From IMG/VR virus record IMGVR_UViG_3300031576_000001, positions 62,001-126,000 of that record: a stretch of DNA of 64,000 nt. The stretch is one strand, 5' to 3'. Below, piece after piece: positions 49-63,989 of the stretch. The first letter of the stretch is position 1. Every line of letters starts with the position of its first letter. The translations under genes and the position numbers were made by a program. The notes under the pieces were generated by a model. That model did no database searches, was not told the origin of the DNA, and saw only the letters and a list, made by a program, of their open reading frames with translations.

Positions 49-369
49 ATGACAACCAACACCTTCAGCATTGATTACGCCGCGCTAGAAAAGTCTGTGG
101 CCGGTTCTCCCTCTGACTTTGACCTGTCCACCATGGAGGTTGCCTCCTCCTCGGGTACGGATGCTTTTCTGGGGCGCCGTACCCCCAAGACTGCCTCGTC
201 GCACAGGCTACGTGTTGCTTCTATAGATCAACTCAAGGGGTTTATGCGGCTGTCACAGGAGTCTTTGGTACACATGAGCACGCAAGACCTTTGGTTTGCT
301 CGCCGCGAGGGTGACGAGCTTGTACTAGAGCGCCTCTTTGATGACAACGGTAGCCCCTTGAAGGTTTTA
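49..369 (+). CDS. Small hypothetical virion-module protein (106 aa), ending at in-frame TTA 367-369
   Basis: ATG at 49. Reads ...NGSPLKV then TTA; next gene GTG at 374. The ORF track reads through to 399 and overlaps the next gene. Confidence 0.6.
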
Positions 370-373
370 CCCC

Positions 374-1684
374 GTGAGACAGCGAACCGCCAGAGCTGAG
401 AGCTTTCTACCCGCCCCGCCCCAAGAGGAGGGGGCAGGTTTTGGTGCGCCCGTCTCTGCGGGTGAGCGCAAGATACCGAAGAACTTCCCGTTTGACCCCA
501 AGGCATTGCAGCCTCTAGCCAGGACCGTGTGGGCGTCGTCGGTAGCCTTGGGTCATGCTCTCACGGCGTACCGCAACTTCAACAGGGTAAAATCCTCTTC
601 GGTGTCCCCGGACGGCTTGCTAGGCGGGCGTGGTTACGTGCTCAAGGTCACGGACCTACGCACTCGACTCTTTCGAGCCTGTGAGGAGCTATCGTCGGTG
701 ATTGACACGTTGCACGACGAGATAAATGCGCCTCACTGGCAGCCCAAGCTAGCGGACCTGGACGCTAACTCGGCTGAGGACATCCTTCATCTTCTCGACG
801 AAGCCGATTCAACCATGAAAGACCCCGAGGAGGAAGCCGATGAGAAGATCGACGACCTGGAGTCTGAAAATGACGGTCCTGGGGGCACGTCTACCAAGGA
901 GCGCTTTGGTGATAAGGAGACCCCTGGCTCGGATCTGCCCAAGGGGGGCAACGCTGACGAGCTAACCAAGACGCCGGGTAGCTCACGCAACAAGCTAGCC
1001 TCTTGGGACTATCAGCCCGCGACCAACCCCAAGGACACCTGGACGAACATCCCCGGTGGACCCCGTGTGCCTTCTCTGGACAGGAATCTGATTGAAAACT
1101 CCCCTGGGGGCTCGGCTAACGTGGGCGAACCCTCTTCGGAGCGCAACAGGGAGCGCACCCGCGAAGAGACCGACGAGAACAAAGGTATCAAGTTTTACGC
1201 TGCCGTAGCCTACTCGGTACTACCAGACGGCTCCCTTGAGCCCCAAAACACGGTAGACGACTTCGGGCTTGGGTACGGCGCCAAGGGTCCAAACTACAAC
1301 CCCCCTCAGTCTGACGGCAAGGGTATTACCGGACCCACAAGCGGTCTACCCGCTGGACCCCCGGCAAGCAAGGTCAGTCCTTGGGATTCGGACTCGACCC
1401 TGGTAACGGAGCGCCAGGTAAATGACACCACGCGCCACGGACAGTCCAAGCTGCCCCAGCCCCCGCTGAACGTGTCCCCTGTCGCCAGGTCTGACTATTA
1501 CGAGGACAAGGGGCTCCAACCCCTTACCGCAGAGAGCACCCTACCCCAACCCCAGGACGCCATGACGCCAACCGATACCGATCTTCCTGGGGCGAGTGCC
1601 ATGTTTGACCCGCGCGATACCGGCTACCGTAGGTGGGACGTTATACCCGTGGTCAAGCCCGACCCCCTTACCAGTCGAAAGTTA
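374..1684 (+). CDS. Hypothetical Pro/Gly/acidic-rich head-module protein (436 aa), ending at TTA 1682-1684
   Basis: First part of track ORF 374..3907. In-frame AAG TTA CCC ATG at 1679-1690. Confidence 0.55.
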
Positions 1685-1687
1685 CCC

Positions 1688-3907
1688 ATGGGTGATCTAG
1701 GAAATCTTGCAGACTTTTTCGAGGAAACCGCTGGACCCGTGGATCATGAGTGGCTTGCGGTAGACCCCTCCGAGTACGGAGCGTCAGAGGCGCTCCCCCA
1801 GCAAAACCTGGACATGGTTCCTGACCTGAAGGCGCTGTGGAGTCATGCCGACCGTGACCCTTCGGTCTACGCGGTGCCTAACCGGGGGATGCTAGAGAAC
1901 TTCGGGGACGCCAGCCTACGCCATGCAGAGCCCCCTGCGTCACTTACCAAGGAGGCGATGACTCGCGCGGCTCGCCAGATTCTCTTGGTGAACCAGGAAC
2001 CCGCCGCATTCTTTGACGCGCTGCGGCGTAACCATGACCTCTCGACGCTTCGGGCGCACAAGGGGGTACTGGCAAGTGTACTGGCAGAGAGGGGTCTCCT
2101 GGGTCCGTTCTACCTGGACTCCTTGGATTTCCCGGGGTGTAACAAGCGTGAGGGTGTAGCCCTTGCGCATCAATGGTACGCCTCTACGCCCTACGTTCTC
2201 GCCAAGCCTGACTGCGGTGGCTGTGTCTTTGCGAGCAAGGAGCTAGGCAAGGATCACTGCTCGGTTTTTGCCAAGACGCTGGTAGCCACCCCTCCTTATA
2301 CCGAGGCTGAGGCTCTTCGCGTAGAGGGTGCGCAAGCGGCGAGGGGGGTACAAGCCTCACAAGCGAGCACGCCCAAGGAAAGAATTCGTCTTGCCCTTCT
2401 AGCCTCCCCGGTGGTGAGCCAGGCGCTCCCCGAGACCAAGCCGGTCGAGAACACTTCGCGTACCCTCACCCCTGTCAAGCCGGCGCCCGCGGTTACCGTC
2501 GCGGAAGACCTGGCGCTACCCAAGGCAGCGGCGCTGGTGGTACTCACAACCCAGGTTCAGTCTGGCAAGGTCGCCTTTGACCAAGCCGCGCAGTGGCACG
2601 CCAGGATACGGGAAGCCTCTACCTCAGCAACCCTCTCCGGTGTGGTGACTGACCTCACGCAAGCGACACCGCTCGCCAAGAGGGTTTACGAGGCGAACCC
2701 TCAAGCCCCCGTAGCCCCCCTGCCCTCCATGCCCGAGGTGCAGCAAGCCCTGGTTACGGCAGCCAACCTCACGAAGAAGCGTGACGCTGCGTTCAACCTC
2801 AAGGTGGCTCAGGAGAAAGCCAAGCCGGTACTGGCTCTTCTACGCCGGGAAATGCTCAAAGGTCGAAAGCCTGGTCAGCTAGAGCAAGCGTTGCGCGCTT
2901 CTTTTGACGTGACGGATCTGGCGAGCACAAAGCCTTTCTGGGCGCCCCTTGTCAAAGAGGCTGGGCTTTATGGTGAGGTGTACCTACCCCAAGAGGCTTT
3001 TGCTGACTGTCTCCGGGGTGCTGACATTGTAGCCTCGTATCAGCCCACGTTGAAAGTCATTGTCTCTGGGCAGAAGTGCGCGGGCTGTGTGCATAACCGG
3101 GTAGGGTACTGCAACGTGTACCGTCGCCCGCTGGTAGCCGGCAAGGAAGCGGCATTTACGCCCACGGTGGCTCGCTCTGTTTTTGACGACAAGCTAACCA
3201 GGGGCACGCTACCCGCCTCGTCTTGGTCGCGGTACGCCAGCCTCACCCCCCGTGACGCGGTACAGGCCATGTACCGCGAGGAACAGGCGCAACAAGCCAG
3301 GCGAGCGGACGATCTGTACACCGCATTTGCAGGCGCCTCTCAGGAGTACAGCACGTCAGACCTCACCAAGAGGGACGTGGTAAAGACCGCCCGTCTACAA
3401 CTAAACGAGGGTCTTTACGGGGATGACTTGCTCTCTGCGTTGCGGCTCAGGTTTGACGAGCGTGACCTACGGGCGAGCCTCCCCCTCCTTCGCCCTGTGC
3501 TAGCCGAGCAAGGCTTGCAAGGGATATACTACGTGGACCCCACGGTCTATGACGACTACGGCACGGGGTGTGATACGGCGTCTAGCCTTCACCGGACGAG
3601 GGGCGCCATCAAGTACGCCAAGGTGGGTCCAGCGTGCTTCGGGTGTCTATTCCAGACGCGCCCCGGGGTGTGCTCCAAGCTGGCAAAGACCCTGGTACAG
3701 AACCCCCCCTACACGGACAAGACCGCTCAGCAAAAAGCTATTCTAGCGTCGGGTAGGTCAACAGAGACAGATTATGCCTCTTTGCTGAACAATGGGGCTA
3801 ACGTGGTGGCAGAGTACCACCTACGTAGCCAGGGGGACATTGAGCTAGACCCGGAGAACCCCAACCCAGCCCCGATAGGGGTTCAACTCGGGGGTAACGT
3901 GATATGA
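1688..3907 (+). CDS. Hypothetical protein (739 aa) with three repeated 4-Cys modules
   Basis: ATG one codon after the TTA (MGDLGNLADFF...). Three GLxGxxY...C...CxGC...C...LV repeats. ATGA overlap with the next gene. Confidence 0.6.
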   Translation: MGDLGNLADFFEETAGPVDHEWLAVDPSEYGASEALPQQNLDMVPDLKALWSHADRDPSVYAVPNRGMLENFGDASLRHAEPPASLTKEAMTRAARQILLVNQEPAAFFDALRRNHDLSTLRAHKGVLASVLAERGLLGPFYLDSLDFPGCNKREGVALAHQWYASTPYVLAKPDCGGCVFASKELGKDHCSVFAKTLVATPPYTEAEALRVEGAQAARGVQASQASTPKERIRLALLASPVVSQALPETKPVENTSRTLTPVKPAPAVTVAEDLALPKAAALVVLTTQVQSGKVAFDQAAQWHARIREASTSATLSGVVTDLTQATPLAKRVYEANPQAPVAPLPSMPEVQQALVTAANLTKKRDAAFNLKVAQEKAKPVLALLRREMLKGRKPGQLEQALRASFDVTDLASTKPFWAPLVKEAGLYGEVYLPQEAFADCLRGADIVASYQPTLKVIVSGQKCAGCVHNRVGYCNVYRRPLVAGKEAAFTPTVARSVFDDKLTRGTLPASSWSRYASLTPRDAVQAMYREEQAQQARRADDLYTAFAGASQEYSTSDLTKRDVVKTARLQLNEGLYGDDLLSALRLRFDERDLRASLPLLRPVLAEQGLQGIYYVDPTVYDDYGTGCDTASSLHRTRGAIKYAKVGPACFGCLFQTRPGVCSKLAKTLVQNPPYTDKTAQQKAILASGRSTETDYASLLNNGANVVAEYHLRSQGDIELDPENPNPAPIGVQLGGNVI

Positions 3908-7179: not shown

Positions 7180-7698
7180 ATGCCAGACTTCCCCCGTAAC
7201 CGAGACTGTCACGCCCTCTTTCGGGGGGACTCGTTTCCGTCCCTCATTGACAACAATCTTGTCAACGGGGGCTGGAGTGGGGGGTCTGGCGTAGAGTGGA
7301 CCACGCCGTTCAAGGATGAGCCTGTGGTAACCCGTACCGATGGGTACGCTTGCGGGTTCATCCTGTTTGGGTCGAGTGAGTCGTCGGACCAGTACACTGC
7401 CAGTACACACCAGAGCCTCACCTACCGCTACAGTGAGATTTGCTCCGGGGGTTGGCTTATCTCGACCCTCAGTTACGAGAAGTACACCTACGCCTCTCGG
7501 CTCATCCCCCCCTTGGTGCTCATCAATTACCTGCCCACAGACCGGCTGGTATTCTCCCTGAGAGGGTTGTGGACCAAGGAGGACGAGTGGACCCTCTCAG
7601 GTGACCCGAGGGCGCCTAACCAGTACTACGCCGGGGGTGTGGTACAAACACCCACACAAGCCACGTCCTTCTACCTCACCTTGCAGTCCTACCTCTTA
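7180..7698 (+). CDS. Paralog 1 of tandem triplet, possible capsid decoration/cement-type protein (172 aa, TTA stop)
   Basis: Shares YEKYTYASRLIPPL and FSLRGLWTKEDEWTLSxDPRAP with the next two genes; TTATG overlap at 7696-7700. Confidence 0.7.
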
Positions 7699-8213
7699 TG
7701 CCATCTACCTACCCCCCAAGAACCCGAGACTGCGTGGTCTCTTACCGTAGCGTCCGCTACTCGGTCAGGGTAGACCCTGCGGTCAAGTTCTGGCAGGGGG
7801 GTCAGGGCTTTCGGTGGGACGACTCCCCCCTGGACGAGATCCGGGTTACGTCCACGGACGGCTACGGGGCGGGTTTTGCGCTCTTCGGGTCAGATGAGGT
7901 CCATGACCAGCTAACGGCCATGTCAGGCAACCAGCCGTTGCACGAGTTCTTGACGCTGGGGGTGGGCACCTGGCTTATCTCGACCCGGACTTACGAGAAG
8001 TACACGCTGGCGTCGCGGACCATTCCCCCGCTCATTCCCTTGGTCTACGCGCCCAACGAGCCATTGTACTTCAGCCTGAGAGGGTTGTGGACCAAGGAAG
8101 ACGAGTGGACGCTTTCACTGGACCCGAGGGCGCCCTCCCCGGTGGTGGCTCGCGTACAGATGCCCCCCTCTTTGCTAACCGATGACTACCTCTCCCTTCA
8201 CACGGCGCTTTTA
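7698..8213 (+). CDS. Paralog 2 of tandem triplet (171 aa, TTA stop)
   Basis: Same motifs; TTATG overlap at 8211-8215. Confidence 0.7.
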
Positions 8214-13900: not shown

Positions 13901-14473
13901 CCTCGCACTCCGTACCCCCCGTGGCTCCCCGTGGACCACGTAACGGAGGGTGACGCTACCCGCCTCTTGGCTGACGCCAGGAAGCGCCTGGACCTCTCCG
14001 TTCCCGGTCGCGTACCGGACAGTGCGTACCGAGAGGCTCTAGACCTCGCGGTCTACACCCTGGATAACGGTGCCTTCTCTCGTGGTCTGCACCCCACCGT
14101 GTACAACGCTCTCCTGGCAAAACTCTCTGGGCAACCTGTAGCCCCTACCGACACCCTCTTGACCGTACAGAAGAAAGCCATGCTCACACAGAAACTCGCC
14201 TCTGACCTTCGCGCCCTGGCTACCAAGGTAGCCGAAGAAGCCCCCCAAGCAGCCTTTGAGATCGTGGAGCTAGCCGAGAAGGTAGCCCAAGACCAAGGCG
14301 AGCAGGATCAAGCTCCCGAGCAGAAACAAGCTCAGGACCAAGAGCAAGGGCAAGGTCAGCAGCAGAAGCAAGCCTACCTTACGCTACGGTCCCTAGTCAT
14401 CAAGACGGCTCATGCCTCTCAGGACAAGGCACCCTTCCTGCCTATACTCCGGCACCTCAAGGCTCAGGGCTTA
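10970..14473 (+). CDS. Large Pro/Lys-rich head-associated protein (1167 aa, TTA stop)
   Basis: Between portal and protease; low-complexity linker; only in-frame TTA found is at 14471, 8 codons before the track stop. Confidence 0.6.
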
Positions 14474-14514: not shown

Positions 14515-14889
14515 ATGGCTTTCAAGCTAGCAACACAAGACGCAGAGCGTATTCTTTCCAACCTGGACCAGGCGTCACAGGTCATCCAAGCCGGCGTAGA
14601 GGCAGGAACCCTCAAGCTGGCTTTCGAGGATGCCAAGGCGATTGTCAACTCACTGGATCAGATTGCCGACCGTATTGAGTACGGTACGTTTGGCAAGCAG
14701 TCCTTTGAGAAGAGGATGGCAGAGGTCATCAAGCGTGAGCCTGACGAGAAGTACATGGACACGTTCAAGAACCCCATGCAGCCCCACGTCACGGACAAGG
14801 ACGAGCCGTACATGGCCGCCTACTCGGATGACCAGTCCTCTGCCATGATTCACGGCAAGAGCACCACAGGGCGCCCGCTCGCTCCCTTA
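14515..14889 (+). CDS. Hypothetical head-module protein (124 aa, TTA stop)
   Basis: Ends GRPLAP-TTA, which leaves AGGAGG (SD of the next gene) in intergenic space. Confidence 0.65.
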
Positions 14890-14915: not shown

Positions 14916-15614
14916 TTGCTAGATTACTGGGCACTCGCCAAAGACTTTCACCAGGGGGACGCGGTTCAGAAGATCAACCCCGTCAACGGGAGTCTTGGTC
15001 CCTACGTGGGCGTTATCAAGCACGCTCACCCGGGGCTGGGGGTGCTTGACATTCAGTGGCCCTTTGGTGTCGAGCGCATTCACCCGGACGAGGTAGTCAA
15101 GGTCAACCCTGAGTTGATGTTGCACCTACCGCCCACGCTCAACCAAGTTTACGGTACGTGGGACACCCGGAGGCTGGCGTCCGCGAGAACCTCTTGGTAC
15201 CCCTTCCCGCCGGGCATCTATACGGACATGGCTCAGGCTTGGCACCACGGCAGGGGTGCTGTGGGCGTGTACGACGACCTTTACCGCAAGTACTCGGGGC
15301 TAGACGACCTAGTGCTGAGAGGCGAGGTCAGCAAGTTCTACACTGCCGCCAAGGTCTTTGGTGACTATCGTGTAGCTCACCACGCGGTAAGGACCGCGAG
15401 CTACTGGGTAGCCGAGAACCGGCAGTACAGGGTCACGGCGGACGAGCTAGACGCCCGTAAGCCCAGGTGTCCCAAGTGTGGGACACGGATGCGCAAGACC
15501 ACCTACAAGATGAAGAAGGGTGAGCGTCACCGCTTGCTAGCTTGCCCCAAGGATCTCTTCTTGGTGAAGACCACGGACATGCTTGGACCCGACGGAAAGG
15601 CAGTGGACTGGTTA
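14916..15614 (+). CDS. Hypothetical protein with C-terminal CxxC Zn-ribbon (232 aa, TTA stop)
   Basis: TTG start with AGGAGG upstream; RCPKCG...LACPKD; ends VDW-TTA at 15612. Confidence 0.65.
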
Positions 15615-20637: not shown

Positions 20638-21528
20638 ATGATACAGCAACAGACCCAAGTATCCAACGCTTACAAGCAAAAGGTCATCGGAGAGCTGATC
20701 AAGACCGCCGCCGGTCGCTCCAAGATCGCAGCCTCCATGATCCAGCCCCTCCGGCTGCGTAGGGACTACACCTCGGTCAACCGCAAGACGTACCTCGTCG
20801 AGCAGCTACCGGACGGCGCTCTGCCGATCTACGACAAAGACCCGGACGTTACCGCCTACGTGGTAGGCGAAGAGGGTGAAAGCATCCTGGCAATCCAGAA
20901 GCCCCGCAGGGTCATCTTCCCCCTGTTCGAGCTAGCCAGCAACCCCGAGATCCCCCTCACCCAGATCAAGGAGCGGCGTTTCGATCTAATCGAGCGCGCC
21001 CAAGACCTCGGTAAGGCTCAGATCCAAGCAGCAGAAGACGAGCGTGGCTTTGCCATTCTCGACAGCATAGCGGTCAACGGGTTTGACACACTGCCCGGCC
21101 AGACCAACCCCGACGTGAACGTGGTTGCCCCTCTGAGCCCCTCGGTGCTGGCAGACGCCTTCGCAGAGATCGAGCGTCACGACCTGCGTGTCGCCCGTAT
21201 CTTCATGAACGCCACGGATTACGCGGATATCCGTAAGTTCGGTCGCGACATTCTCGACATCGAGTCGCAAGCCAACCTGCTCAAGACCGGTCTGCAAGCC
21301 ACCCTCTGGGGAGCCCAGATCATCACCAGCCGCTTGGTCCCGGTGGGCTTTACCTACCTTTGCTGCGAACCGGAATTCTTCGGGCGCATCCCCGTGAGGA
21401 CCGAGCTCTCGGTTATCAGCGCCGACGATCCGAAGGCTCGCACGATAGGCTTCTCTATCTTCGAGAACCTGGGGATTGGGGCATTCAATCCGCGGGGCGA
21501 GTGCCGCATGGTCATCACCCGCGCGTTA
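20638..21528 (+). CDS. Major capsid protein (HK97-like fold, 296 aa, TTA stop)
   Basis: GAAAGGA SD; FELASNPEIPLTQIKERRFDLIERAQDLGKAQIQAAEDERGF pattern and position; ends VITRA-TTA-GGG-TGA. Confidence 0.8.
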
Positions 21529-21540
21529 GGGTGACCATAG

Positions 21541-21601
21541 CAGCCTGAAAAGGCTGTGAAACAAAACGAGGGGGGTGCTTCCGCAAGGGGGTGCCCCCCT
21601 C
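21541..21601 (+). terminator. Two GNRA-tetraloop hairpins downstream of MCP
   Basis: CAGCCT-GAAA-AGGCTG (21541-21556, perfect) and a G/C-rich stem with GCAA loop (about 21568-21601). Confidence 0.5.
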
Positions 21602-21708
21602 GTCTATTTGTCCAGCCTGATGGTTTTGTAACGTGTAGTAGTCTAGCCCTGACAAGGTTACGAAACCTGTTGACAGAGCATCTTGGGCAGTTTACTACAC
21701 ACTCCAAG

Positions 21709-24387
21709 ATGAACACCGAGCACAGTTACGGGCTAACGCGCGAGCGTTTGGTAGACCTTTACGTTACCCAAGGTCTAACGGACGTTGAGATTGGGGAGTC
21801 CCTGGGGGTAAGGTACTCTGCGATCTCCCGGTTGAGGGAGAGGTGGGGGATACGCAACCTGTTGGCGTCGGAGAGGTTGGGGTTGCCTGAGACCCTCACG
21901 GAGAACCAGCAACAGCTTTTGCTGGGCACCATGCTAGGTGATGGTAGGTTGACGGGTTCTGGGTCGGAAACAGCCCTACTTACCGAGTACCATTGCCTCA
22001 AGCAGTCAGACTACCTCATGTGGAAGGTTGCCCAGTGGGGGAGCTTCATCAACAGGGTTTCTGACCGTACCAACGGGGAGTACCGTGGAAAAGTGTACTG
22101 CACTCATGCTAGCAGGGTTTTTCGCCCCTACTGGGAGATGTTTTACCCAGAGGGTAAGGGGCACAAGACCCTGAAACTGCTGGACCCTAAGAGGGTTGGA
22201 CCGTTGGCGTTGGCGGTGTGGTACCTGGATGACGGTAGCAAGAGCAACACGGGTACATTTCGTTTTTCCCTGGGTCCGCCCGACCCGGAGAGTTTCGAGG
22301 TTGCCTTGGGTATTTTCCGCAACCTTGGGATGCACCCCGCACGGTACGGGGAGGCTGGGGACAGCACAATCATTGTGCAGACTCGTAAGGACATCACTCT
22401 CTTTGCAGAGCTAGTGTCCCCACACATTCCAGATTGTATGAGCTACAAGATGGAGTTGAAAGCCAAGCGTGGCGGACCCCCCCCTAGAGACTTGTTGACC
22501 CCGCAAGCCTTGCAGCCTTTGATTGATCGAGACTTGTCAGCCATGGAAATGGCTGAGATTTTCTCAGTTTCTAGGAATAGCGTGGGGCGAGCCTTGGACC
22601 GGATGGGGGTGCCACACCAGCCTACCGGGCGACCCGCGGGTAAGCGTGGTTTTGACTTGGGGGTATCCGAGGCACGCATTCTCAAGATGGACCCTCTCGC
22701 CCCAGACTATCGTGAGAGAGTGTTGGGTGTGCTTTCGATGACGGAGTTCCCTGGTAAAGAGCCCACTACGCTTGAGGCTCGCAAGGACATTGCCTCCTTG
22801 AAAACTTCCCCTGTGCGTGTTCAAGACGGTAAAATTGTGGGAGCGTCCAAGCTGGGTCAGCGGGCGTGCTTGCACTTCTTCGGTTACCGTTTGGATGGCA
22901 CGTACCGTGATAACCTGTCGGCGCGTAGGGGGTGGTACGATACCGAGACTCTTGTGAGGGCGGTGAACTTTCAGATAACCCACCACGACCCCGTGACCCC
23001 TAAGAGGGTCTGGCGGGCGGTGCAAGCCATTCTTCGAGCGCCTTGCAACTTCCGCCCCACAATTGCTAAAGCTCTGGTGGACGCTTTCTGCCCTCCCGGT
23101 GGGGTGGTGTTGGACCCTTGTGCTGGTTACGGGGGTCGAGCCCTGGGCACTCTGGTCACGGGGCGCACCTACGTAGGCGTGGACCCGCACCCCAAAGCAA
23201 AAGAAGCCTACCACGGCTTGTTTGCCTTGTTGGGTGGTAATGCCACGTTTCACCACGCGCCTTATGAGGAGGTAGCCCTGGGGGACTTGCAGGCTGACTT
23301 GGCGTTGACCTCACCCCCATACTTCTCGGTTGAACGGTACTCTGACGCCACTACTCAAAGCTGGGTACGGTACAAGACGTGGATGCTGTGGGTCAACGGT
23401 TTTCTGCGTCCCTTGCTGACCAAAACGTACCAGCACTTGAAGCCGGGCGCTCTTTTCTTGTTGAACGTCAAGGACATTCGCAAGGGTAAGGACACCTACC
23501 CCTTGGTTAGCGAGTCCCGGCGTCTTGCCGAAGAGGCTGGGTTTGTATCTGAGCCAGACCTGTCTTTGCCTCTTGGTAGGCTCGGTCCAAAGGAGAAGAG
23601 TAGTGAGCCTATTCTTGTGCTCAGGAAGCCTGGACCTGGCACCCCTCGACCTGTTGAACGCTCACAGCCTGTGGTCGCTACCCAGATGGCGCCAACGGTT
23701 GCAGAGCCTCCACGCCCGCGCAGGTACGTACACCCTGAGAATGCTGCAAGTAGGGAGGTCGTTTGCAAGGGGTGTGGGGTTACATTCACCGCGCACCGCA
23801 GTGACCGAGAGTTTCACAGCGAAGCCTGTTACGTCAAGTACCGCAGGCGTCAGGCTAGAGAGGAGGTGCCCAACAAGACCTATCGTACCTTCACCTGTGA
23901 GAAGTGTGGGGTCTCTTGGGACACGGAAGCCCTGGGACGCTTTACCCTCTGCGAGGGGTGCAGAGCCACACACACCAGAGAGAGTACAGAGGGTAAGCGT
24001 GAAAAGACGTGCCACTACCGCCACTGCCAGAAGACCTACACGGATACCTCTCGGTTGAACGGCACCAAGTTTTGCTGCGCGGAGCACCAGCGCCGTGAGA
24101 AGCTGTTCAAGTCGGGTCAAGTAACCTCGGAAGACCAGTTCAGAGACCCCAGCAAACCTACGTACCGCACCTGTAAACTGTGTAAGACCCAAGGCACCGA
24201 AGAGGAGATCCTTGGCGGTGTGTGCCTCCTCTGCCGTGCCAAGCTGCGCGAGAAGACGTGCAAGAAATGCAACGCGACCTACACAGACGCCTCTGAGCGA
24301 AACACGAGGCGGTACTGCTTTGCTTGTCGCCCCGACGACACCCTACCCGTGACCCCGCCTCTGGGTATACTGCACGACCTGGACTAG
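21709..24387 (+). CDS. Fusion: LAGLIDADG-like endonuclease + SAM-dependent DNA amino-methyltransferase + CxxC Zn-finger repeats (892 aa)
   Basis: LLGTMLGDG and LAVWYLDDG motifs; VLDPCAGYGG (motif I) and LTSPPYF (motif IV); many CxxC/CRPD units at the C-terminus. Start set at ATG 21709 because an in-frame TTA lies upstream at 21658. Confidence 0.8.
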   Translation: MNTEHSYGLTRERLVDLYVTQGLTDVEIGESLGVRYSAISRLRERWGIRNLLASERLGLPETLTENQQQLLLGTMLGDGRLTGSGSETALLTEYHCLKQSDYLMWKVAQWGSFINRVSDRTNGEYRGKVYCTHASRVFRPYWEMFYPEGKGHKTLKLLDPKRVGPLALAVWYLDDGSKSNTGTFRFSLGPPDPESFEVALGIFRNLGMHPARYGEAGDSTIIVQTRKDITLFAELVSPHIPDCMSYKMELKAKRGGPPPRDLLTPQALQPLIDRDLSAMEMAEIFSVSRNSVGRALDRMGVPHQPTGRPAGKRGFDLGVSEARILKMDPLAPDYRERVLGVLSMTEFPGKEPTTLEARKDIASLKTSPVRVQDGKIVGASKLGQRACLHFFGYRLDGTYRDNLSARRGWYDTETLVRAVNFQITHHDPVTPKRVWRAVQAILRAPCNFRPTIAKALVDAFCPPGGVVLDPCAGYGGRALGTLVTGRTYVGVDPHPKAKEAYHGLFALLGGNATFHHAPYEEVALGDLQADLALTSPPYFSVERYSDATTQSWVRYKTWMLWVNGFLRPLLTKTYQHLKPGALFLLNVKDIRKGKDTYPLVSESRRLAEEAGFVSEPDLSLPLGRLGPKEKSSEPILVLRKPGPGTPRPVERSQPVVATQMAPTVAEPPRPRRYVHPENAASREVVCKGCGVTFTAHRSDREFHSEACYVKYRRRQAREEVPNKTYRTFTCEKCGVSWDTEALGRFTLCEGCRATHTRESTEGKREKTCHYRHCQKTYTDTSRLNGTKFCCAEHQRREKLFKSGQVTSEDQFRDPSKPTYRTCKLCKTQGTEEEILGGVCLLCRAKLREKTCKKCNATYTDASERNTRRYCFACRPDDTLPVTPPLGILHDLD

Positions 24388-34902: not shown

Positions 34903-34939
34903 ACAAGGGCTCAGCCTTCCAAGGTTATCAGGCTAAAGA

Positions 34940-36175
34940 TAACCAGGAACCGTCCCGTATACCCTCGGGTTTCGTAGCCACGGGCGCGCTCGCCCCGGGG
35001 GACAGCCTTTGGTTGTCCGTGATCAGGTGCCACCCCTTTTGAAAGCCTAGCTCGGTCAGGGTTTGCAGGTTGGCTAGCAGCACGGAGCCCTCCAACGCCT
35101 TGCTGTTCTCTTGGTAGTGCTCGAACCAGCGGACCCCGTACTTGCCATACACAGAGGCAGGCGTGGGGGTGTAGGGTGGCTTCTCGCCCGTGACAATCTG
35201 ATAGCCCAAAGAGTTACACAGGTGGACGTAGACCCTCTCCGAGTTTTCCGTGTCCCACACGTCCAAACCAAACTCGTCCTCTTCGATAGCCTGGGTCATC
35301 TGACCCCCAGCCGCCATCCCCATGTCCACGTTGAGCGACGCCAGCATGAAAGCACTGGTCTCTTCTGTGCCCCGCTCCATGTCGCAGTTGAGCCTGGTGT
35401 CCAGGGTGTAGTCACTGAGAGCTATCGCCCCCTTGGTCACGTTCTCCCCCCAGGCGCACCCAATGGGTACCGTGCTCGACTCGAAAGCGCTGTAGTTCAC
35501 GGTCATGCCCCCGCTACTCTCTGAAATGGTTGTGATGCCACCCTCGAAGGACTGACCCGTACCCCCCCCCTTGCGACTCCTGGTAAAGCCCCGGAAAGTC
35601 TGAGCCATGACAGGGAAGCGAGCCTCGTAGACTTCGCGCTTCATGGGGAAGACTTCGATCTGAAGACCCCCGAAGCTCTCTTTGCCCGAGAGTTGAGACT
35701 CCACCGTCCAGCCTTGACCCAAAGGCGCCGCTACGAACTGGCGGATCTTCCCCTTCTCTACGCAGAAGCCGTCAATCCAGGGCTGCTTGGGGGCGACCAT
35801 GTAGTCCTTCTCACGCAGCCCCGCGGACCACTCTTCCCCGGTCACGGCTGACCTCATACCCGCCGCCACCTTGATCGCAAAGGGGTAGTGCGCCCTGCGG
35901 TCACCCGCGTACCCTGCCTTGAAAGCGATGTAGAGCGCCTCCGCTTGGTACATGGGTAGGAAGATACCCCCGTGTTTGTTCCACTCGGGGGGTACGCGGT
36001 CCTTGTAGCGGTCAACCTCCCTGAGAGGGAAGGCGCCCAGCCCGGGAGGTAGCCGGTGGGTCTCGTCGTTGTCGGGGAGCCTCAGCGTGCGTTGAAAATC
36101 CAGGGTGAGGTTTGCGTTTGCGTGCCCGACCTTACCGGAGAGGTCAAAAACAAGGGTTTCATTGTGTATCCTCAT
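34940..36175 (-). CDS. Conserved hypothetical protein (TTA stop)
   Basis: FQRTLRLPD...LPPGLGAFPL...LPMYQAEA family recalled from bacteria and fungi; ends RDGSW-TTA. Confidence 0.7.
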
Positions 36176-36794: not shown

Positions 36795-37172
36795 TTACCG
36801 TCCCTTGGTGCCAGGGATACTGATCTCGTGGAGGCAGCGTGCAGCGGTACTCACCGCAAGGTAAAACTGCGACACGGCAAAGGCGCGCTCACCAGGGATG
36901 GTAGTCGGGCTGAGATCGATCACGGTTTGGACCCCCCCGTGTGAGGGCAACAGGTTGATCGTAGCCGTAGCCCAGTCAGGGATACCGGCGGCGGGCGAGT
37001 AGCCAAAGGTAAGGGAGGTCTTCTCACCCCTCTTTAGCCGGGCTTCGCAGAGAACAGCCAACTCCTCTGCGAAAGGAGCCCCCTCAAGGTACAGGTTGTA
37101 CCCCAAGTCAAGGAGGTCAAGGGCTTGCGTGGCGATCTGGTTCGCCAACTTGTTGAGTCGAGGTTTTTTCAT
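36795..37172 (-). CDS. Hypothetical protein (125 aa)
   Basis: AGGAGG SD and ATG just after an in-frame TTA; second half of track ORF 36795..37388. Confidence 0.65.
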   Translation of the reverse strand: MKKPRLNKLANQIATQALDLLDLGYNLYLEGAPFAEELAVLCEARLKRGEKTSLTFGYSPAAGIPDWATATINLLPSHGGVQTVIDLSPTTIPGERAFAVSQFYLAVSTAARCLHEISIPGTKGR

Positions 37173-37190
37173 GTGGCCCCTCCTTCTACG

Positions 37191-37388
37191 TAACGAGTAG
37201 ACAGTGACCGGCTGGTCGTACCCCACGGTCACGTCGTAGCGCTTTGTGCCGTCGTGCAGGGTGAGGTACACTTTGCCCTGGCTCTTGTAGACCTCCAAGA
37301 CTTCGCCCTTGGCGACGCCCTCGGGGAGGTACATCTTTACGATCTCAGCCTTGTAGACGTGGGCGGCACAGGTTTCGGTGGTGTTCAT
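37191..37388 (-). CDS. Small hypothetical protein (65 aa, TTA stop)
   Basis: First half of the same track ORF; ends TVYS-TTA; downstream of motif copy 3. Confidence 0.6.
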
Positions 37389-37682: not shown

Positions 37683-38189
37683 ATGTCAGGGGTACTTTTT
37701 TACCGCGGTCAGCAGCTAGGGCGTAACGACCTCAACCTCTTCTTGACCAACGCCAGCGACCACCCCACGCAAGCCGCTGAGATTTGGTACGCCCTCTATG
37801 ATTTCACCACGGGCTTTGAGTGCCTCGTAGGAGACGAGCGCCGTACTCCCCTCATGCCCAGCCTGGGTGAGTACTACGCCTCGGTCGTGATCCCTACGGA
37901 CGCCAGGATCGGGGGCTACAGGGTACGGTGGTTCTTCCGAGAGACCGTGGGCTCACCGCTGCAATCCGTGGTCCAAGAGTTTCAGGTTATCGACAAAAAC
38001 CAGTTCAGTCCGTCCGTATTCAGTGACACCATGACGGATTTGATACGTCGTCTGCGTATTCTGGTCCGAGATAACTGCTTGGATGGGGCAGAAACTATTG
38101 AAATTGTGATTGACCAGGACCAGAAAGAGATTACACTGGAGGATCTCTGGGACGCACTTCATGACCTCTCCCCCCTCCCCCCATCCTGA
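37683..38189 (+). CDS. N-terminal half of a fractured neck/head-tail gene fused to a 37-aa N-intein
   Basis: Ig-like domain, then LRILVRDN|CLDGAETIEI...ITLEDLWDAL (intein block A) from 38076; TGA stop. Confidence 0.75.
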   Translation: MSGVLFYRGQQLGRNDLNLFLTNASDHPTQAAEIWYALYDFTTGFECLVGDERRTPLMPSLGEYYASVVIPTDARIGGYRVRWFFRETVGSPLQSVVQEFQVIDKNQFSPSVFSDTMTDLIRRLRILVRDNCLDGAETIEIVIDQDQKEITLEDLWDALHDLSPLPPS

Positions 38190-39075
38190 ACTGGTACCCT
38201 ACTTGGAAAAGCACCAAATTACTTGGGAAGTGTTCTCGAACACACGTCTTAAACCACGTAGCGTGGTAGCTAAGAGACGCGCGATTGTCACTGAGATACA
38301 CGAAACTGGAGCAACCTGGGCGCACATGGTGGCGATTACGTGTTTGAGTCAAGGGTCGATTCAACGCTTGAGTCAAGCTAAAGGTAACCCTCTAGTGAAG
38401 CAACGAAAGCAACAAATTGCAGCAGAGCTTGGACGCCAAGGGAAAGGTGCTAAAAAGCCGTGGTTGACCTTGAAGCTCCAAGCTGATTGGGAATCTGGAA
38501 AGTTCGACTTCCACAAAGGGCGTATTCGTCCACAGTTTGAAGTAGACAAGATTCAAGCGTCTTGGGCGGACCCTGCACGACATGATAACCAAGCTCAAAT
38601 GATGAAGTCTTGCTGGCAAGACCCTAACTTTCGAGACAACCTTCTATCTTTTCACCGATCTGACACAGAACGGGTAAAACGCTCCCAGGCTCAGGCCCAG
38701 CGTATGCTCGATCATCCTGCAACTTACATGGGGGGCCGTGGCGAGTATGTTTCAACACAAAAAGCTACAGTATCTAAAACCTGGGTGCGTAGTTCTTTTG
38801 AGAAGCGGTACGTTGAAATACTAGAACGCGACCCAACTGTTCTTTCTTACGAGTATGAGCCTCTTTATGTTTTGCCGGATGGTAGGCACATCCTTCCTGA
38901 CTTTCTAGTGCGCTATCGGGACGGAAAGCAAGAGCTTGTTGAGGTTAAGGCTAAGTGGGTACTTGCTATGCCTGTCACATATAAAGCACAAGTGCGCCTA
39001 GCACTAGCGCGAGAGCTTGCAAATAGAGAAGCACTTGCCTTTAAAATCGTTACGGAGAATGACCTGTGGCCTTGA
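38161..39075 (+). mobile_element. Free-standing PD-(D/E)xK (TnsA-N-like) endonuclease gene between the split-intein halves
   Basis: SSFEKRY...YEYEP...LPDFLVRY...ELVEVKAKW; AT-richer than the flanks. Confidence 0.75.
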
Positions 39076-39941
39076 CTACTATTGAACGTAACCAAATACG
39101 TGCAGCATACCGGACAGGGCGACTAACCACCTGGGCTGTAAATAAAGAAGGGCAACGAGAGCTTCAACCTATCCAGGCTGTACACCAACACAACTTGCAG
39201 TCTGATGACTTGTACGCCGTTACCACAACACGGGGCACATCGTATATGACTGGGGGTCACCGGGTATTTCGCACCCCCACATTGAAGGTAGAAGCGTGCT
39301 CTTTGACGCAAAACTTCACTGTCCTTGGCGAAACCATCGTGACCTCAAGACTTGTCGGTAAAGCCAGAACGGTCTATGACTTGACTGTAGGTGTGTGGCA
39401 CAACTTCAGGTTGTGCCGTAGTGGGTTGGTGGTGTCAAACTCACCGGACCAAAACTACCGCTTCGTCCCCCCCTCTAGGGAGGCTACTATCTCTCAGTTC
39501 AATCGTGTCTTTGGTTTTCTGTGGGAGGATTACGAGATGGACGAGTATATTCAGCGCTCGCTCGACCTGATCATCGCGTCCCCACCTCGTACACCTTTTG
39601 CCAGCGTCGAGCAAATGATAGTGCAGAAGAGGGAATGGACAACACTGTTGCTTACAGGTGCGGCAACATTTGCAATAAGGGCAATGATGCTAAACTGGAT
39701 TGCGAATGAATTTGATTTTTCCGTGGGGGGTATCTCTCTAAACATAGAGAAGTCGTCTAAGTACGAGAGTGCGAAAGGTAACTTTGAAGAGGAGTTTACC
39801 CGCCAGCTAGAACAAAGTAAAAAAACGGTACTGATTATCAGAGGGCTACAGCAGCCCCGTTTCGGAATCGGCGTGAGATCCTCCTTCGGGAGTTTTGTGG
39901 GTAGAAATGTGGTAACCCCTCGTAAATTCATAGGTTTCTTA
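39066..39941 (+). CDS. 125-aa C-intein fused to the C-terminal half of the fractured gene (TTA stop)
   Basis: TGGH (block B), VYDLTV..WHNF (block F), VVSN|S junction at 39440/39441; ends PRKFIGF-TTA. Confidence 0.78.
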
Positions 39942-39994
39942 GCTCTGGTATTGGGGCTATTGCACTTACACTACAGTGGTGCTACCGTACTGGT

Positions 39995-41362
39995 GTGTCA
40001 ATAAAAGGCTCCTGTTTGTGCCCTTGCTGTGGAAAAGACATGGCACCCCATGCAATACATGGTCACACCGCGGTCTGTGAGGCTTGGAAAGCGTCTCGTG
40101 GGAAACCCTGGCCCCAGTTCAAATACAGTTACAGTCGTGCGAAGTACCTACCTGGCTTGGTGGAGGGTGTAGACTTTCTTCGATGCCACGTTTGCCTAAC
40201 CAATGGTTGGGACTTCAGGTTCAATCGTCTAGTGCAGCACTTGGCAATCCACGGGTTGTCTGAGTCGGAGTACTTGAGCCTATTCCCAAGTAAGCTCGTG
40301 CGTTTGGCACTGACCAACGAGCGTCGCAAGGCTTCTGTTCGTGCGAAGTACGGAGTAGACTTCATCGCGCAAGTCGAGGAATGTAAAGAGAAGTCGAGGA
40401 ACACCATGGTAGAACATTATGGTGTTCCCTCAGCTATGCAGTCCGAAGATGTCCGAGCGAAAGCCACTAAAACCAACCTTGAGCGGTATGGTTCGGAAAA
40501 CCCGTTTGGTTCCAAAGAGGTTCAGAAGAAAATACGAAAGACCCTTTTGTCTAAGTATGGGGTTGCGAATCCCCAACAAGTGTCTGACATACGAACCAGA
40601 ACGCTACAGACTAACAAGGAACGGTACGGGTCGGAGCACTTCTTCCAAACGCCTGATTTTGACACGGTACGAGCGGCAACGTGCCAAGAGCGTTATGGTG
40701 CTCCTCACCATATGCAATCGGTTGAGGGTCGGGCCAACCATGAAGCGGCATTCATTGCAAAGTACGGGGTACCTAACCCATTTCTTATCCCTGAGATACG
40801 GGACCGTGCTTATGCCACTAATGTAGCTAACCATGGGGGCGTACACGCCCTTGCACACCCGGACGTGATTGCAGCACGGAAAAGAAACCTCTTGGCACTC
40901 TACGGCGTGGATAACATATCTAAGGTGCCTGCAATCAAGGACAAAATCATAGCAAAAGTGCGTGCCAGCTTCTCTGGTGCCCCTAAGAGAACTACACCCG
41001 AGCGGATAGTTGAGGGGTTCTCACCTGAATGTGTGGTTTATTCAGGTGATTGGTCCTACTGGGTTACATGGGCTAACGGCTACCATAAGAACCCAGACTT
41101 TGTGATTCTCACCCCGCAACAGTTGGAGGAGTACAAGGCTGGCGCAGTCCTGAATGCCCTCCGTACTAGTAAGGTTATTGAGGTCAATGGGGACTTTTGG
41201 CACACTAAGTACAGAGGTGTGACACGAGAGGAGCGGGAACAACAATTCTTTGAGGGTTACGCTTCCATAGGGGTAACCTGTCTCATTCTTTGGGAGTTGG
41301 ATCTTTACGCTTCAACGTCAGACGCTATACGTGCCAAAGTTGAGGCATTCTGTTGTTCCTAA
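39995..41362 (+). mobile_element. Putative homing endonuclease (Zn fingers, KYG-type repeats, Vsr/PD-(D/E)xK-like C-terminus)
   Basis: CPCC and CHVC, repeated (K/R)YGV units, KNPDF...VIEVNGDFWH; flanked by a duplicated host 3' end. Confidence 0.75.
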
Positions 41363-63269: not shown

Positions 63270-63989
63270 GTGACACCCTCCTACGCACCCCTCCCCTTGC
63301 ATTTGCGATACGACCCCATTACTCGCCCCTCACCCCAAGAGGCGGACACCGGGGTCGTGGTCTTTTCAACGCTGCCCGCGTTGTACGAGAGCCTCATCCT
63401 CGGTGCGCCCCTACCAAGCACCCTGGTCATCCGGCACTTGACCACGCCCACCCTCTTGGCAGGTACCCTCTTCCTTCACCGGGAAACGCTACTCTCACCC
63501 CTCACGCTGCCCCTGGTTTACGGTCTCGACCTCGCTGAGCGTGAGGGCTTCCCAGCGACGGCTCACCTACCGTCCCTCCCCGAGCTAAGGCTACCCTATG
63601 CCTCTCAGCCCAAGCCAGAAATCACTGCCCGCATAGGGGCTACCGTCGCCACGCTAAGAGACTACCTCGCCTGTCCACCCCCAGAACTACCCAAGGGCGC
63701 CTCTGTGCTTGACGTAGGCTCCAACGGGTTCGTTGTGGCTGAGGGTCTACGCACGCCCCTCCCCCTCTACCAGCAAGGCTACCTGCGGGGTGTCATCTTC
63801 CCCGTAGCCCCCTTCACTACAGTCACCATCTTCAAGAAAAGCCGCCTCGTCCCCATGGACCTTGGCTGCGCGCAACGCTACCTCAAAGCCCTCGACTCTA
63901 GCCTTGGTGTCGCCTTTGACCCCCTCTCCCTCTTGGTGCAAACCCGGCTCACCCGCGAAGAGGTAGTCAAGGTGCTCACCTACTGCTGA
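63270..63989 (+). CDS. Hypothetical Leu/Pro-rich protein (239 aa)
   Basis: Long ORF; start uncertain. Confidence 0.5.
   Translation: MTPSYAPLPLHLRYDPITRPSPQEADTGVVVFSTLPALYESLILGAPLPSTLVIRHLTTPTLLAGTLFLHRETLLSPLTLPLVYGLDLAEREGFPATAHLPSLPELRLPYASQPKPEITARIGATVATLRDYLACPPPELPKGASVLDVGSNGFVVAEGLRTPLPLYQQGYLRGVIFPVAPFTTVTIFKKSRLVPMDLGCAQRYLKALDSSLGVAFDPLSLLVQTRLTREEVVKVLTYC

What the first reader, a model, noticed from the sequence alone, without database searches (positions are those of the whole stretch)
37170..37193. TTA followed by a perfect Shine-Dalgarno and in-frame ATG splits a minus-strand ORF
The minus strand reads TCG TTA CGT AGA AGG AGG GGC CAC ATG AAA. A textbook AGGAGG lies between the TTA and an in-frame ATG, in the middle of what the ORF track treats as one 197-aa protein.
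Basis: seen in the sequence. Interest (0 to 1): 0.6.

Follow-up and report, generated by a model that had tools for sequence, protein, structure and literature searches.

The report
TTA used as a stop codon
In this huge phage from a cave metagenome the leucine codon TTA behaves as a fourth stop codon, so the flagged 197-aa "ORF" is really two small genes; this kind of code change was previously known only from organelles.

Summary
The sequence is exactly as described: the minus strand reads TCG TTA CGT AGA AGG AGG GGC CAC ATG AAA inside ORF 36795-37388.

The rest of the genome (a 322.6-kb piece of a huge phage) answers the question instead:
- **Position of TTA:** in-frame TTA is 28-fold enriched in the last 15 codons of ORFs (p=3.5e-48). 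Out-of-frame TTA is not enriched, and no other codon exceeds 2.2-fold.
- **Coding signal:** it collapses after TTA just as it does after TAA, TAG and TGA.
- **Homologues:** in 12 of 14 genes with alignable homologues, the relatives' stop codon lies within 2 codons of the TTA, mostly at exactly the same position.
- **Sister phage:** TTA and canonical stops interchange at orthologous gene ends.
- **tRNAs:** the 38-tRNA cluster covers every Leu codon except UUA.

About 30% of genes end in TTA. The 197-aa ORF is therefore two genes: 65 aa (37191-37388, TTA stop) and 125 aa (36795-37172, with its own strong SD and ATG).

UUA-to-stop was previously reported only in organelles. The releasing factor and the host remain unresolved.

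The parts
37191..37388 (-). Gene A: 65 codons followed by a TTA terminator. A small beta-rich protein of unknown function.
   Evidence: ORF listed with TTA=*. Coding potential is positive in this frame. Its own start carries a GAGGGG SD-like motif. In the ESM Atlas model, residues 1-65 match stand-alone proteins of about 70 aa at TM 0.73-0.78.
37191..37193 (-). In-frame TTA, read here as the stop codon of gene A.
   Evidence: Genome-wide, TTA sits at gene ends, coding signal stops after it, and it aligns with the stop codons of homologues.
37179..37184 (-). Shine-Dalgarno sequence AGGAGG of gene B, 6 nt upstream of the ATG.
   Evidence: The SD duplex of -12.2 kcal/mol is stronger than at 99% of chosen starts and is the strongest of 898 deep internal ATGs.
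36795..37172 (-). Gene B: a 125-aa alpha/beta protein of unknown function. It starts ATG AAA AAA and ends in TAA.
   Evidence: ORF listed with TTA=*. Coding potential is positive. Local RNA folding around the start is as weak as at real starts. Atlas structural neighbours include a 125-aa family at TM 0.51.
34940..34942 (-). TTA terminator of the gene three genes downstream in the same operon (415-aa ORF, 411 aa when TTA is a stop).
   Evidence: Homologues in two other huge phages end ...GNW* and ...GKW*, where this gene has ...GSW followed by TTA. The sister-phage orthologue also has TTA at exactly this position.
1682..1684 (+). TTA that splits a 1177-aa ORF (374-3907) into two genes, followed by CCC ATG. 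The architecture is the same as in the finding.
   Evidence: Relatives have a stop codon at or beside this position, followed by a conserved M[AG][DE]LGD start. In LR745208.1 the two parts are separate ORFs in different frames.
367..369 (+). TTA terminator of a 106-aa gene, with a 10-codon non-coding tail before TGA.
   Evidence: The LR745208.1 orthologue ends ...GSPLKV followed by TAA, and this gene has ...GSPLKV followed by TTA. In 63 of 65 relatives' HSPs the stop is at exactly this position.
7696..7698 (+). TTA terminator of a 172-aa gene, with a 25-codon tail.
   Evidence: In 121 of 122 relatives' HSPs the stop codon is at exactly the TTA position. The sister phage has TGA there.
14887..14889 (+). 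TTA terminator of a 124-aa gene.
   Evidence: In 31 of 43 relatives' HSPs the stop is at exactly this position. L085 ends ...GRKLAP* where this gene has ...GRPLAP followed by TTA.
15612..15614 (+). TTA terminator of a 232-aa gene.
   Evidence: In 32 of 41 relatives' HSPs the stop is at exactly this position. The sister phage has TGA there.
14471..14473 (+). TTA terminator of a 1167-aa gene.
   Evidence: In 5 of 6 relatives' HSPs the stop is at exactly this position.
21526..21528 (+). TTA terminator of a 296-aa gene (82% identical to its LR745208.1 orthologue).
   Evidence: The orthologue ends ...ITR followed by TGA, and this gene has ...ITRA followed by TTA GGG TGA. The sister phage has TTA at the same place.

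Best explanation
The window comes from a huge phage (a 322.6-kb record, estimated 68% complete, from a cave metagenome) in which TTA is not a working leucine codon. It marks the end of translation and serves as a fourth terminator in about 30% of genes.

The flagged 197-aa ORF is therefore two adjacent co-directional genes. Gene A has 65 codons and ends at TTA (37193-37191). An 18-nt spacer carrying AGGAGG follows. Gene B has 125 codons and starts at ATG 37172. The two look like one ORF only because they share a frame and the spacer holds no TAA, TAG or TGA.

Shown here:
- TTA sits at gene ends.
- Protein-coding signal stops at TTA.
- TTA is positionally homologous to the stop codons of relatives.

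Inferred:
- The nascent chain is actually released at UUA.
- By analogy with organelles, release is most likely done by a class-I release factor (RF2-type) with altered codon recognition. That factor could belong to a still unknown host or be an unrecognised phage factor.
- The change followed disappearance of TTA under GC pressure and loss of UUA decoding (codon capture).
For: **Enrichment.** In-frame TTA occurs 56 times in 3990 tail codons and 38 times in 76094 body codons, an odds ratio of 28.5 with p=3.5e-48. The effect is frame-specific: 30x in frame, 1.08x and 0.78x out of frame. The next most tail-enriched codon reaches only 2.2x.

**Coding signal.** The coding log-odds is +0.28 per codon before the first TTA and -0.07 after it. 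Canonical stops give -0.10 to -0.11 after, whereas eight control sense codons give +0.21 to +0.25 after.

**Body TTAs.** All 25 TTAs lying more than 25 codons before a canonical stop are followed by one of three things: loss of coding in that frame, a switch of coding frame, or a nearby in-frame start codon (an ATG 2-17 codons on in the ten clearest cases)..

**Homologues.** In 12 of 14 TTA genes with alignable homologues, the relatives' stop lies within 2 codons of the TTA. Only 1 of 14 fits the canonical stop. Every alignment that crosses a TTA and was inspected has a stop in the subject at or within 3 codons of it.

**Sister phage (contigs C1 and C4 of MAG G006, TerL 68-69% identical).** It shows the same signal, with odds ratios of 13.9 and 13.3 (p=2e-19 and 7e-15). 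At orthologous gene ends, G000's TTA aligns with TTA in 16 cases and with a canonical stop in 12. G000's canonical stops align with TTA in 19 cases.

**Domains.** A ThyX domain lies before a TTA and a CxxCxxCC domain after it. The sister phage has TGA at exactly that position.

**tRNAs.** The 38-tRNA cluster holds Leu anticodons GAG, UAG, CAG and CAA but not UAA. The non-TTA relative LR745208.1 has a class-II Leu(UAA) tRNA.

**Controls.** LR745208.1 and 80 related IMG/VR loci show no tail enrichment of TTA.

**The site itself.**. The two halves resemble stand-alone proteins of about 70 aa and 125 aa.
Against: - There is no protein or RNA evidence. No RNA run holds this phage.
- The 197-aa ORF itself has no homologue, so the split at this particular site rests on genome-wide behaviour.
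- No RF-1 or PCRF domain was found in 322 kb of this phage or on the 332 kb of sister-phage contigs. No conserved GGQ-bearing candidate was found either.
- The bacterial contigs of the MAG that holds the sister phage use TTA as a sense codon and carry canonical RF1 (PAT motif) and RF2 (SPF motif). Either that MAG is not the host, or the phage terminates at UUA by an unknown route.
- The sister phage carries a 76-nt class-I tRNA with a UAA anticodon, which could read TTA under some conditions.
- The record is only 68% complete, so the absence of tRNA-Leu(UAA) or of a release-factor gene is not proven.
Confidence: 0.85

Rival explanations
1. TTA is a conditional terminator, in the manner of bldA-type control. 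Usually the ribosome stops or stalls at UUA. When a tRNA with a UAA anticodon is supplied by the host or the phage, UUA is read as an amino acid. This locus then also yields a 197-aa fusion of A and B, and other genes gain C-terminal extensions.
For: The sister phage has a class-I tRNA(UAA) outside its main tRNA cluster. This phage and LR745208.1 likewise carry lone suppressor-type tRNAs, with CUA and UUA anticodons respectively. The candidate host MAG reads TTA as sense. About 10 TTA junctions, including this one, keep the downstream gene in frame. A role for UUA as a regulatory rare codon in Streptomyces and its phages is discussed in PMC10732093.
Against: The tails after TTA carry no coding signal and no homology, so read-through products are not under selection. 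The number of in-frame junctions is about what chance predicts (one third of TTA-ended genes times the chance of a stop-free spacer; my own estimate). No tRNA(UAA) was found in this phage's 322 kb.
Confidence: 0.2
2. This is one ordinary two-domain 197-aa protein. TTA is simply a rare Leu codon in a basic linker (SLRRRRGHMKK) whose AGA AGG AGG codons resemble an SD by chance.
For: There is no canonical stop and gene callers call one gene. A few internal AGGAGG-ATG sites are expected by chance.
Against: The genome-wide behaviour of TTA argues against it. The junction is among the least coding-like windows of the genome, and most other such windows lie at gene ends. The site is the strongest internal translation-initiation region out of 898. 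The Atlas model splits into two parts, residues 1-67 and 77-195, that match different stand-alone folds.
Confidence: 0.04
3. Artefact. The TTAs are really TAA or TGA, miscalled through sequencing or assembly error or through a modified base.
For: Only one sample holds this phage, at about 12x depth, and only contigs could be checked, not raw reads.
Against: Two assemblers agree. The effect is confined to the reading frame, which no chemistry or assembler could know. A second phage from a different project shows the same effect. Out-of-frame TAA and TGA occur in ordinary numbers.
Confidence: 0.01

Closest known systems
UUA (Leu) to stop reassignment in organelles: labyrinthulid (Thraustochytrium) mitochondria (NCBI table 23), peDinoflagellate plastids (UUA/UCA), and Marsupiomonadales and Pseudoscourfieldia mitochondria (UUA/UUG). 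Source: PMC12574857.
   Same: The same codon becomes a terminator. It is diagnosed in the same way, by the codon occurring only at positions where homologues have stop codons. It is used alongside the canonical stops for a large share of genes.
   Different: Those are organelle genomes, where the change is tied to substitution of a conserved Ser (Ser204) in organellar RF2 or to a remodelled mtRF1a. Here the genome is a tailed phage of bacteria. No altered release factor has been found, and the only candidate host has a canonical RF2. The 2025 paper calls the plastid case the first sense-to-stop change outside mitochondria.
Stop-codon-recoded phages (code 15, TAG to Gln; code 4, TGA to Trp), such as Lak megaphages and crAss-like phages. 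Sources: PMC9523058, PMC8346664 and PMC7886860, as listed.
   Same: A phage whose reading of one codon may differ from its host's. It has a large tRNA complement that includes a suppressor-type tRNA. Standard gene callers give wrong gene models.
   Different: The direction is opposite. Here a sense codon becomes a stop, whereas in those phages a stop becomes sense. TAG and TGA behave as stops in this phage. The annotation symptom is fused or over-long ORFs rather than fragmented ones.
Rare UUA codon and bldA tRNA regulation in Streptomyces and its phages (PMC10732093).
   Same: TTA is extremely rare in a GC-rich setting, and the outcome at UUA depends on whether a cognate tRNA is available. 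The TerL gene has distant similarity to actinophage genes, and two of the three related contigs found in bacterial MAGs lie in Actinomycetota MAGs.
   Different: In that system UUA is a Leu codon inside conserved coding sequence. Here it never lies inside alignable coding sequence, and it replaces stop codons.
Nested in-frame internal starts that give two products from one ORF. Examples from my own knowledge: lambda C/Nu3, T7 gene 4A/4B, phiX174 A/A*.
   Same: A strong SD and an ATG lie in frame inside a longer open frame.
   Different: In those genes the upstream part is translated through the internal start. Here the upstream reading most likely ends at TTA, before the SD.

Membership tests
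Genetic code with UUA as terminator (table-23-like Leu-to-stop reassignment) | The codon is absent from conserved coding sequence and strongly depleted from gene bodies. | tested here: met
   TTA occurs at 0.5 per 1000 in gene bodies, against 16.5 for TTG and 15.3 for CTA. No inspected alignment with relatives runs through a TTA without a stop in the subject.
Genetic code with UUA as terminator (table-23-like Leu-to-stop reassignment) | The codon occupies positions where homologues have stop codons. | tested here: met
   This holds for 12 of 14 genes against 81 relatives. TTA and canonical stops interchange in 47 orthologue pairs with the sister phage.
Genetic code with UUA as terminator (table-23-like Leu-to-stop reassignment) | Protein-coding signal ends at the codon. 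| tested here: met
   The coding log-odds falls from +0.28 to -0.07 across TTA, as at TAA, TAG and TGA. Control sense codons show no change.
Genetic code with UUA as terminator (table-23-like Leu-to-stop reassignment) | No functional cognate tRNA-Leu(UAA) is available. | tested here: inconclusive
   None is among the 39 phage tRNAs. However, the record is 68% complete, the host's tRNAs are unknown, and the sister phage has a class-I tRNA(UAA).
Genetic code with UUA as terminator (table-23-like Leu-to-stop reassignment) | A release factor with an altered codon-recognition region (RF2 Ser of SPF, or remodelled RF1). | tested here: inconclusive
   No release-factor gene was found in either phage. 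The RF2 of the MAG binned with the sister phage has a normal SPF motif and its RF1 a normal PAT motif. The true host is unknown.
Genetic code with UUA as terminator (table-23-like Leu-to-stop reassignment) | Proteins end at the residue before the codon. | not testable with these tools
   This needs proteomics. No RNA or protein data exist for this phage.
Stop-codon-recoded phage (code 4 or code 15) | In-frame TAG or TGA lies inside genes and is read as an amino acid. | tested here: not met
   Coding signal ends after TAG and TGA. Same-frame downstream genes restart with their own start codon.
Stop-codon-recoded phage (code 4 or code 15) | A phage-encoded suppressor tRNA. | tested here: met
   A tRNA with a CUA anticodon lies at G000:307803-307877(-). 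Its role is unknown.
Nested in-frame internal start (two products of one ORF) | The long form is translated through the internal start site. | tested here: not met
   The TTA lies 18 nt upstream of the ATG, and TTA ends translation genome-wide by the tests above. Direct proof is lacking.
bldA-type UUA regulation | UUA encodes Leu inside conserved coding sequence of regulated genes. | tested here: not met
   No TTA was found inside alignable coding sequence.

The most novel reading that the evidence does not exclude
The code change may be imposed by the phage rather than inherited from its host. The host would read UUA as Leu, as the MAG binned with the sister phage does. During infection the phage's near-complete tRNA set, which lacks a UUA decoder, would take over, and an unrecognised factor would release chains at UUA. 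Lone class-I tRNAs such as tRNA(UAA) in the sister phage would then act as suppressors of the new stop. That would be a phage-private four-stop genetic code working by a release mechanism that has not been described.
Probability: 0.3. Interest if true: 0.95.

Novelty: new variant of a known kind. Interest (0 to 1): 0.9.

Why it matters
Sense-to-stop codon reassignment has been documented only in mitochondria and, since 2025, in one group of plastids. A phage lineage that ends about 30% of its genes with TTA would be, as far as I could find, the first such case described in a bacterial virus. It runs opposite to the known phage recodings, in which a stop becomes sense.

The change is nearly invisible to standard annotation. 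It produces only short false C-terminal tails and occasional fused ORFs such as this one, so similar codes may have been overlooked elsewhere. The simple tail-versus-body codon statistic used here could be run across IMG/VR and GTDB to look for them.

It also opens a concrete mechanistic question: what releases the chain at UUA when no altered RF2 is in view? And it bears on how phages separate their own translation from that of the host.

Tried and rejected
- **Homologues of the 197-aa ORF or of either half.** None were found by phmmer over 1.84 billion representatives, the word-indexed search of 5.8 billion clusters, IMG/VR, Pfam or PHROGs, the phage's own genome, LR745208.1, G001 and G002 or the G006 MAG (best E=0.67).
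- **Synteny through the neighbouring 415-aa gene (L003, L004).** The gene order is not conserved there, although the C-termini of those homologues proved useful.
- **AlphaFold2 on the single sequence.** Mean pLDDT was 45.8, too poor for a fold search. Only the Atlas model (pLDDT 0.61) was used, and only as a weak lead.
- **Reads.** Only contigs from the source sample were available, so minor variants and expression could not be examined.
- **TerL of this phage used alone against IMG/VR.** It found nothing. A two-sequence alignment was needed.
- **Release-factor domains in both phages.** None were found. A scan for GGQ motifs conserved between the two TTA phages gave no candidate.
- **TerL relatives in 300 other genomes of G006's family.** None were found, so host assignment gains no support there.
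- **+1 slippage onto the TAG of TTAG as the real terminator.** Rejected, because half of the TTAs are followed by C or T.
- **TAG read-through by the tRNA(CUA).** No sign of it.
- **Shadow ORFs or an opposite-strand TAA as the cause.** Rejected, because the effect lies at the 3' ends of ORFs whose strand is confirmed by Pfam hits, start-site motifs and homologues.
- **Literature.** Seven searches found no report of TTA/UUA as a stop in a phage or bacterium.

Full report
**The observation.** On the minus strand the window reads TCG TTA CGT AGA AGG AGG GGC CAC ATG AAA AAA.
- TTA (37193-37191) is codon 66 of the 197-aa ORF 36795..37388.
- AGGAGG is at 37184-37179.
- The ATG (37172-37170) is codon 73, in frame and 6 nt after the SD, with no TAA, TAG or TGA in between.
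- A second assembly of the same sample agrees base for base.

**Where the window lies.** It is bases 62001-126000 of a 322,633-bp IMG/VR virus record. CheckV estimates the record as 68% complete. It is JGI Ga0247727_10000022 from sample 3300031576, a cave metagenome. It encodes a large terminase and a portal and 39 tRNAs.

Nothing comes back.
- The ORF is an orphan in 1.84 billion representative proteins, in the 5.8-billion-cluster index as a whole or as halves, in IMG/VR, and in Pfam and PHROGs.
- It has no paralogue in its own genome.
- The gene caller used for the public record calls it as one gene.

**The junction itself.**
- Coding potential is positive in the same frame on both sides and dips exactly at the junction.
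- An SD before an internal ATG is not rare in itself: 3 of 846 deep internal ATGs have AGGAGG.
- TTA is the rarest codon of the genome, at 1.2 per 1000 and 1.2% of Leu codons.
- The five codons from TTA to the second AGG are among the 0.013% least coding-like 5-codon windows.
- ATGAAAAAA occurs nowhere else in 322 kb.
- On a start-site model trained on this genome, the site beats 97.7% of chosen starts, and only 2 of 898 deep internal ATGs (itself included) score as high. It has the strongest SD pairing of those 898 and has start-like weak local folding.
- The other extreme low-coding windows turned out to lie mostly within the last 25 codons of ORFs, and nearly all contain TTA. That observation led to the main result.

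**TTA behaves as a stop codon throughout the genome.** The analysis used 266 confident ORFs.
- In-frame TTA occurs 56 times in the last 15 codons (3990 codons) and 38 times in the bodies (76,094 codons). That is an odds ratio of 28.5 with p=3.5e-48.
- The next most tail-enriched codon reaches 2.2-fold.
- The effect exists only in frame: 30x, against 1.08x and 0.78x in the other two frames. Base composition and nearby DNA motifs are therefore excluded as causes.
- The mean coding log-odds per codon is +0.28 in the 20 codons before the first TTA of an ORF and -0.07 in the 20 after. For TAA, TAG and TGA the value after is -0.10 to -0.11. For eight control sense codons, before and after both lie between +0.21 and +0.27.
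- 79 of 266 ORFs contain an in-frame TTA. Counted as a stop, it would be the second most used: TGA 111, TTA 79, TAA 39, TAG 37.
- TTA is usually followed by G or C and then by C-rich positions, and almost never by A.
- TTA-ended ORFs occur along the whole record on both strands.
- The 25 TTAs lying more than 25 codons before a canonical stop fall into two kinds. In one kind, coding in that frame collapses or another frame takes over. In the other, coding continues in frame behind a nearby in-frame start codon. Several of these have the compact form TTA-NNN-ATG. These look just like the junctions after canonical stops.

**Comparative evidence.**
- The nearest GenBank relative is LR745208.1, a 485-kb uncultured huge phage with TerL 46% identical. 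An alignment-based scan gave 80 related IMG/VR loci with TerL 45-63% identical.
- None of these shows TTA tail enrichment, so the method does not create the signal.
- For 14 TTA-containing genes whose homologues align to within 6 codons of the TTA, the relatives' stop codon lies within 2 codons of the TTA in 12. Only one of the 14 fits the downstream canonical stop.
- In the best-sampled genes the match is exact in 121 of 122, 63 of 65, 32 of 41, 31 of 43 and 5 of 6 alignments.
- For example, the LR745208.1 orthologue ends ...GSPLKV followed by TAA where this phage has ...GSPLKV followed by TTA.
- Every alignment that appeared to cross a TTA and was inspected contains a stop in the subject at or beside that position.

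**Three cases close to the finding.**
- The 1177-aa ORF at window 374-3907 has the same architecture as the finding (TTA CCC ATG). Relatives have a stop at or beside the TTA position, followed by a conserved M[AG][DE]LGD start. In LR745208.1 the two parts lie in different frames.
- A ThyX domain and a CxxCxxCC domain lie on either side of another TTA.
- The 415-aa gene three genes downstream of the finding ends ...GSW followed by TTA where its homologues end ...GNW* and ...GKW*.

**A sister phage.**
- The one scan of GTDB genomes found a 127-kb contig with TerL 68% identical in a MAG labelled Lysinibacter sp. EUL_204.
- That contig (C4) and a 205-kb contig (C1) of the same MAG are phage DNA about 50% identical in protein to this phage.
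- Both show the same signal. The odds ratios are 13.9 and 13.3 (p=2e-19 and 7e-15), and the coding log-odds falls from +0.20 and +0.28 to -0.05 and -0.13 across TTA.
- Between the two phages the terminators interchange at orthologous gene ends. This phage's TTA faces TTA 16 times and a canonical stop 12 times, including TGA at exactly the end of ThyX. Its canonical stops face TTA 19 times.
- A four-stop model of the sister phage fits 76 of 109 orthologue ends within 2 codons. A three-stop model fits 43.

**tRNAs and release factors.**
- This phage's cluster of 38 tRNAs has Leu anticodons GAG, UAG, CAG and CAA but not UAA. A lone tRNA with a CUA anticodon lies elsewhere in the genome.
- LR745208.1, which uses TTA normally, has a class-II tRNA-Leu(UAA).
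- The sister phage has no class-II Leu(UAA). It does have a 76-nt class-I tRNA with a UAA anticodon, outside its tRNA cluster.
- Neither phage shows an RF-1 or PCRF domain. No GGQ-bearing protein is conserved between the two.
- The bacterial contigs of the MAG use TTA as a sense codon, with no tail enrichment and coding continuing after it. They encode canonical RF1 (PAT motif) and RF2 (SPF motif).
- Whether that bacterium is the host is not established. It rests on binning only, and 300 other genomes of its family hold no related terminase.

**Reading of the finding.**
- With TTA as a stop, the locus is a 65-aa gene (37191-37388) and a 125-aa gene (36795-37172), separated by 18 nt that carry the SD. 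This fits the spacing and small gene sizes of the operon.
- In the ESM Atlas model (pLDDT 0.61), residues 1-65 match stand-alone beta-barrel proteins of about 70 aa at TM 0.73-0.78. Residues 78-193 weakly match alpha/beta proteins, including a 125-aa family at TM 0.51.
- The functions of both proteins are unknown.

**What is shown and what is inferred.**
- Shown: TTA marks the end of coding sequence and is homologous to stop codons.
- Inferred: the chain is released at UUA, and by what.
- In organelles, UUA-to-stop goes with substitution of a conserved serine in RF2 or with a remodelled RF1 (PMC12574857). That paper describes its plastid case as the first sense-to-stop change outside mitochondria.
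- GC-rich relatives of this phage have almost no TTA at all. That fits codon disappearance followed by capture as a stop.
- Seven literature searches found no report of TTA as a stop in a phage or bacterium. The library does not hold subscription-only papers.

**Verdict.** The cause is a lineage-specific change in the meaning of TTA, seen here in two related huge phages. The mechanism and the host remain open.

Noticed in passing
G000:307803-307877 (-), outside the window: A lone 75-nt tRNA with a CUA anticodon (amber-suppressor type) lies far from the 38-tRNA cluster at G000:21.2-31.3 kb. TAG nevertheless behaves as a stop in this genome.
   Followed up: partly
G006:C4:121826-121901 (+), sister phage: A 76-nt class-I tRNA with a UAA anticodon and an encoded CCA end lies outside the main tRNA cluster of a phage that also ends genes with TTA. 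It would act as a suppressor of the new stop.
   Followed up: partly
LR745208.1 (W01): 7629-7705 and 142332-142406: The non-TTA relative carries an ochre-suppressor-type tRNA (UUA anticodon) and a tRNA that ARAGORN reads with a four-base anticodon (ttta). It also has a 197-aa open frame with an RF-1 domain at 63516-63839(-).
   Followed up: no
window 38000-40000: GC falls from about 0.59 to 0.46-0.50. This stretch covers a TnsA-like endonuclease ORF (38110-39075; Pfam PF08722, E=5e-8) and the neighbouring ORF, with a DUF7487 protein just beyond it. It looks like an inserted mobile or homing module, divergent from the operon that holds the finding.
   Followed up: no
window 21556-24387 (+): A 943-aa ORF combines a LAGLIDADG endonuclease domain (residues 120-237) with a DNA methylase domain (residues 581-644). 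It has a TTA at codon 35. It may be an intein, a homing-endonuclease insertion, or several genes read as one.
   Followed up: no
window 34928-36175 (-), and L003 and L004: The 415-aa protein has 40%-identical homologues in two other huge phages (452 kb and 427 kb). In both it sits directly after an XRE-type HTH gene, which suggests a mobile two-gene module. No family match was found.
   Followed up: partly
G006:C5:1-40000: A further contig of the MAG shows an intermediate TTA tail enrichment (odds ratio 5.2, p=6e-4), but coding continues after TTA. It may be a mixed contig or another phage piece.
   Followed up: no
G000 tRNA cluster 21.2-31.3 kb: All four tRNAs labelled Leu by anticodon are short (74-81 nt) and so apparently lack the long variable arm of bacterial tRNA-Leu. 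Their amino-acid identity is uncertain.
   Followed up: no
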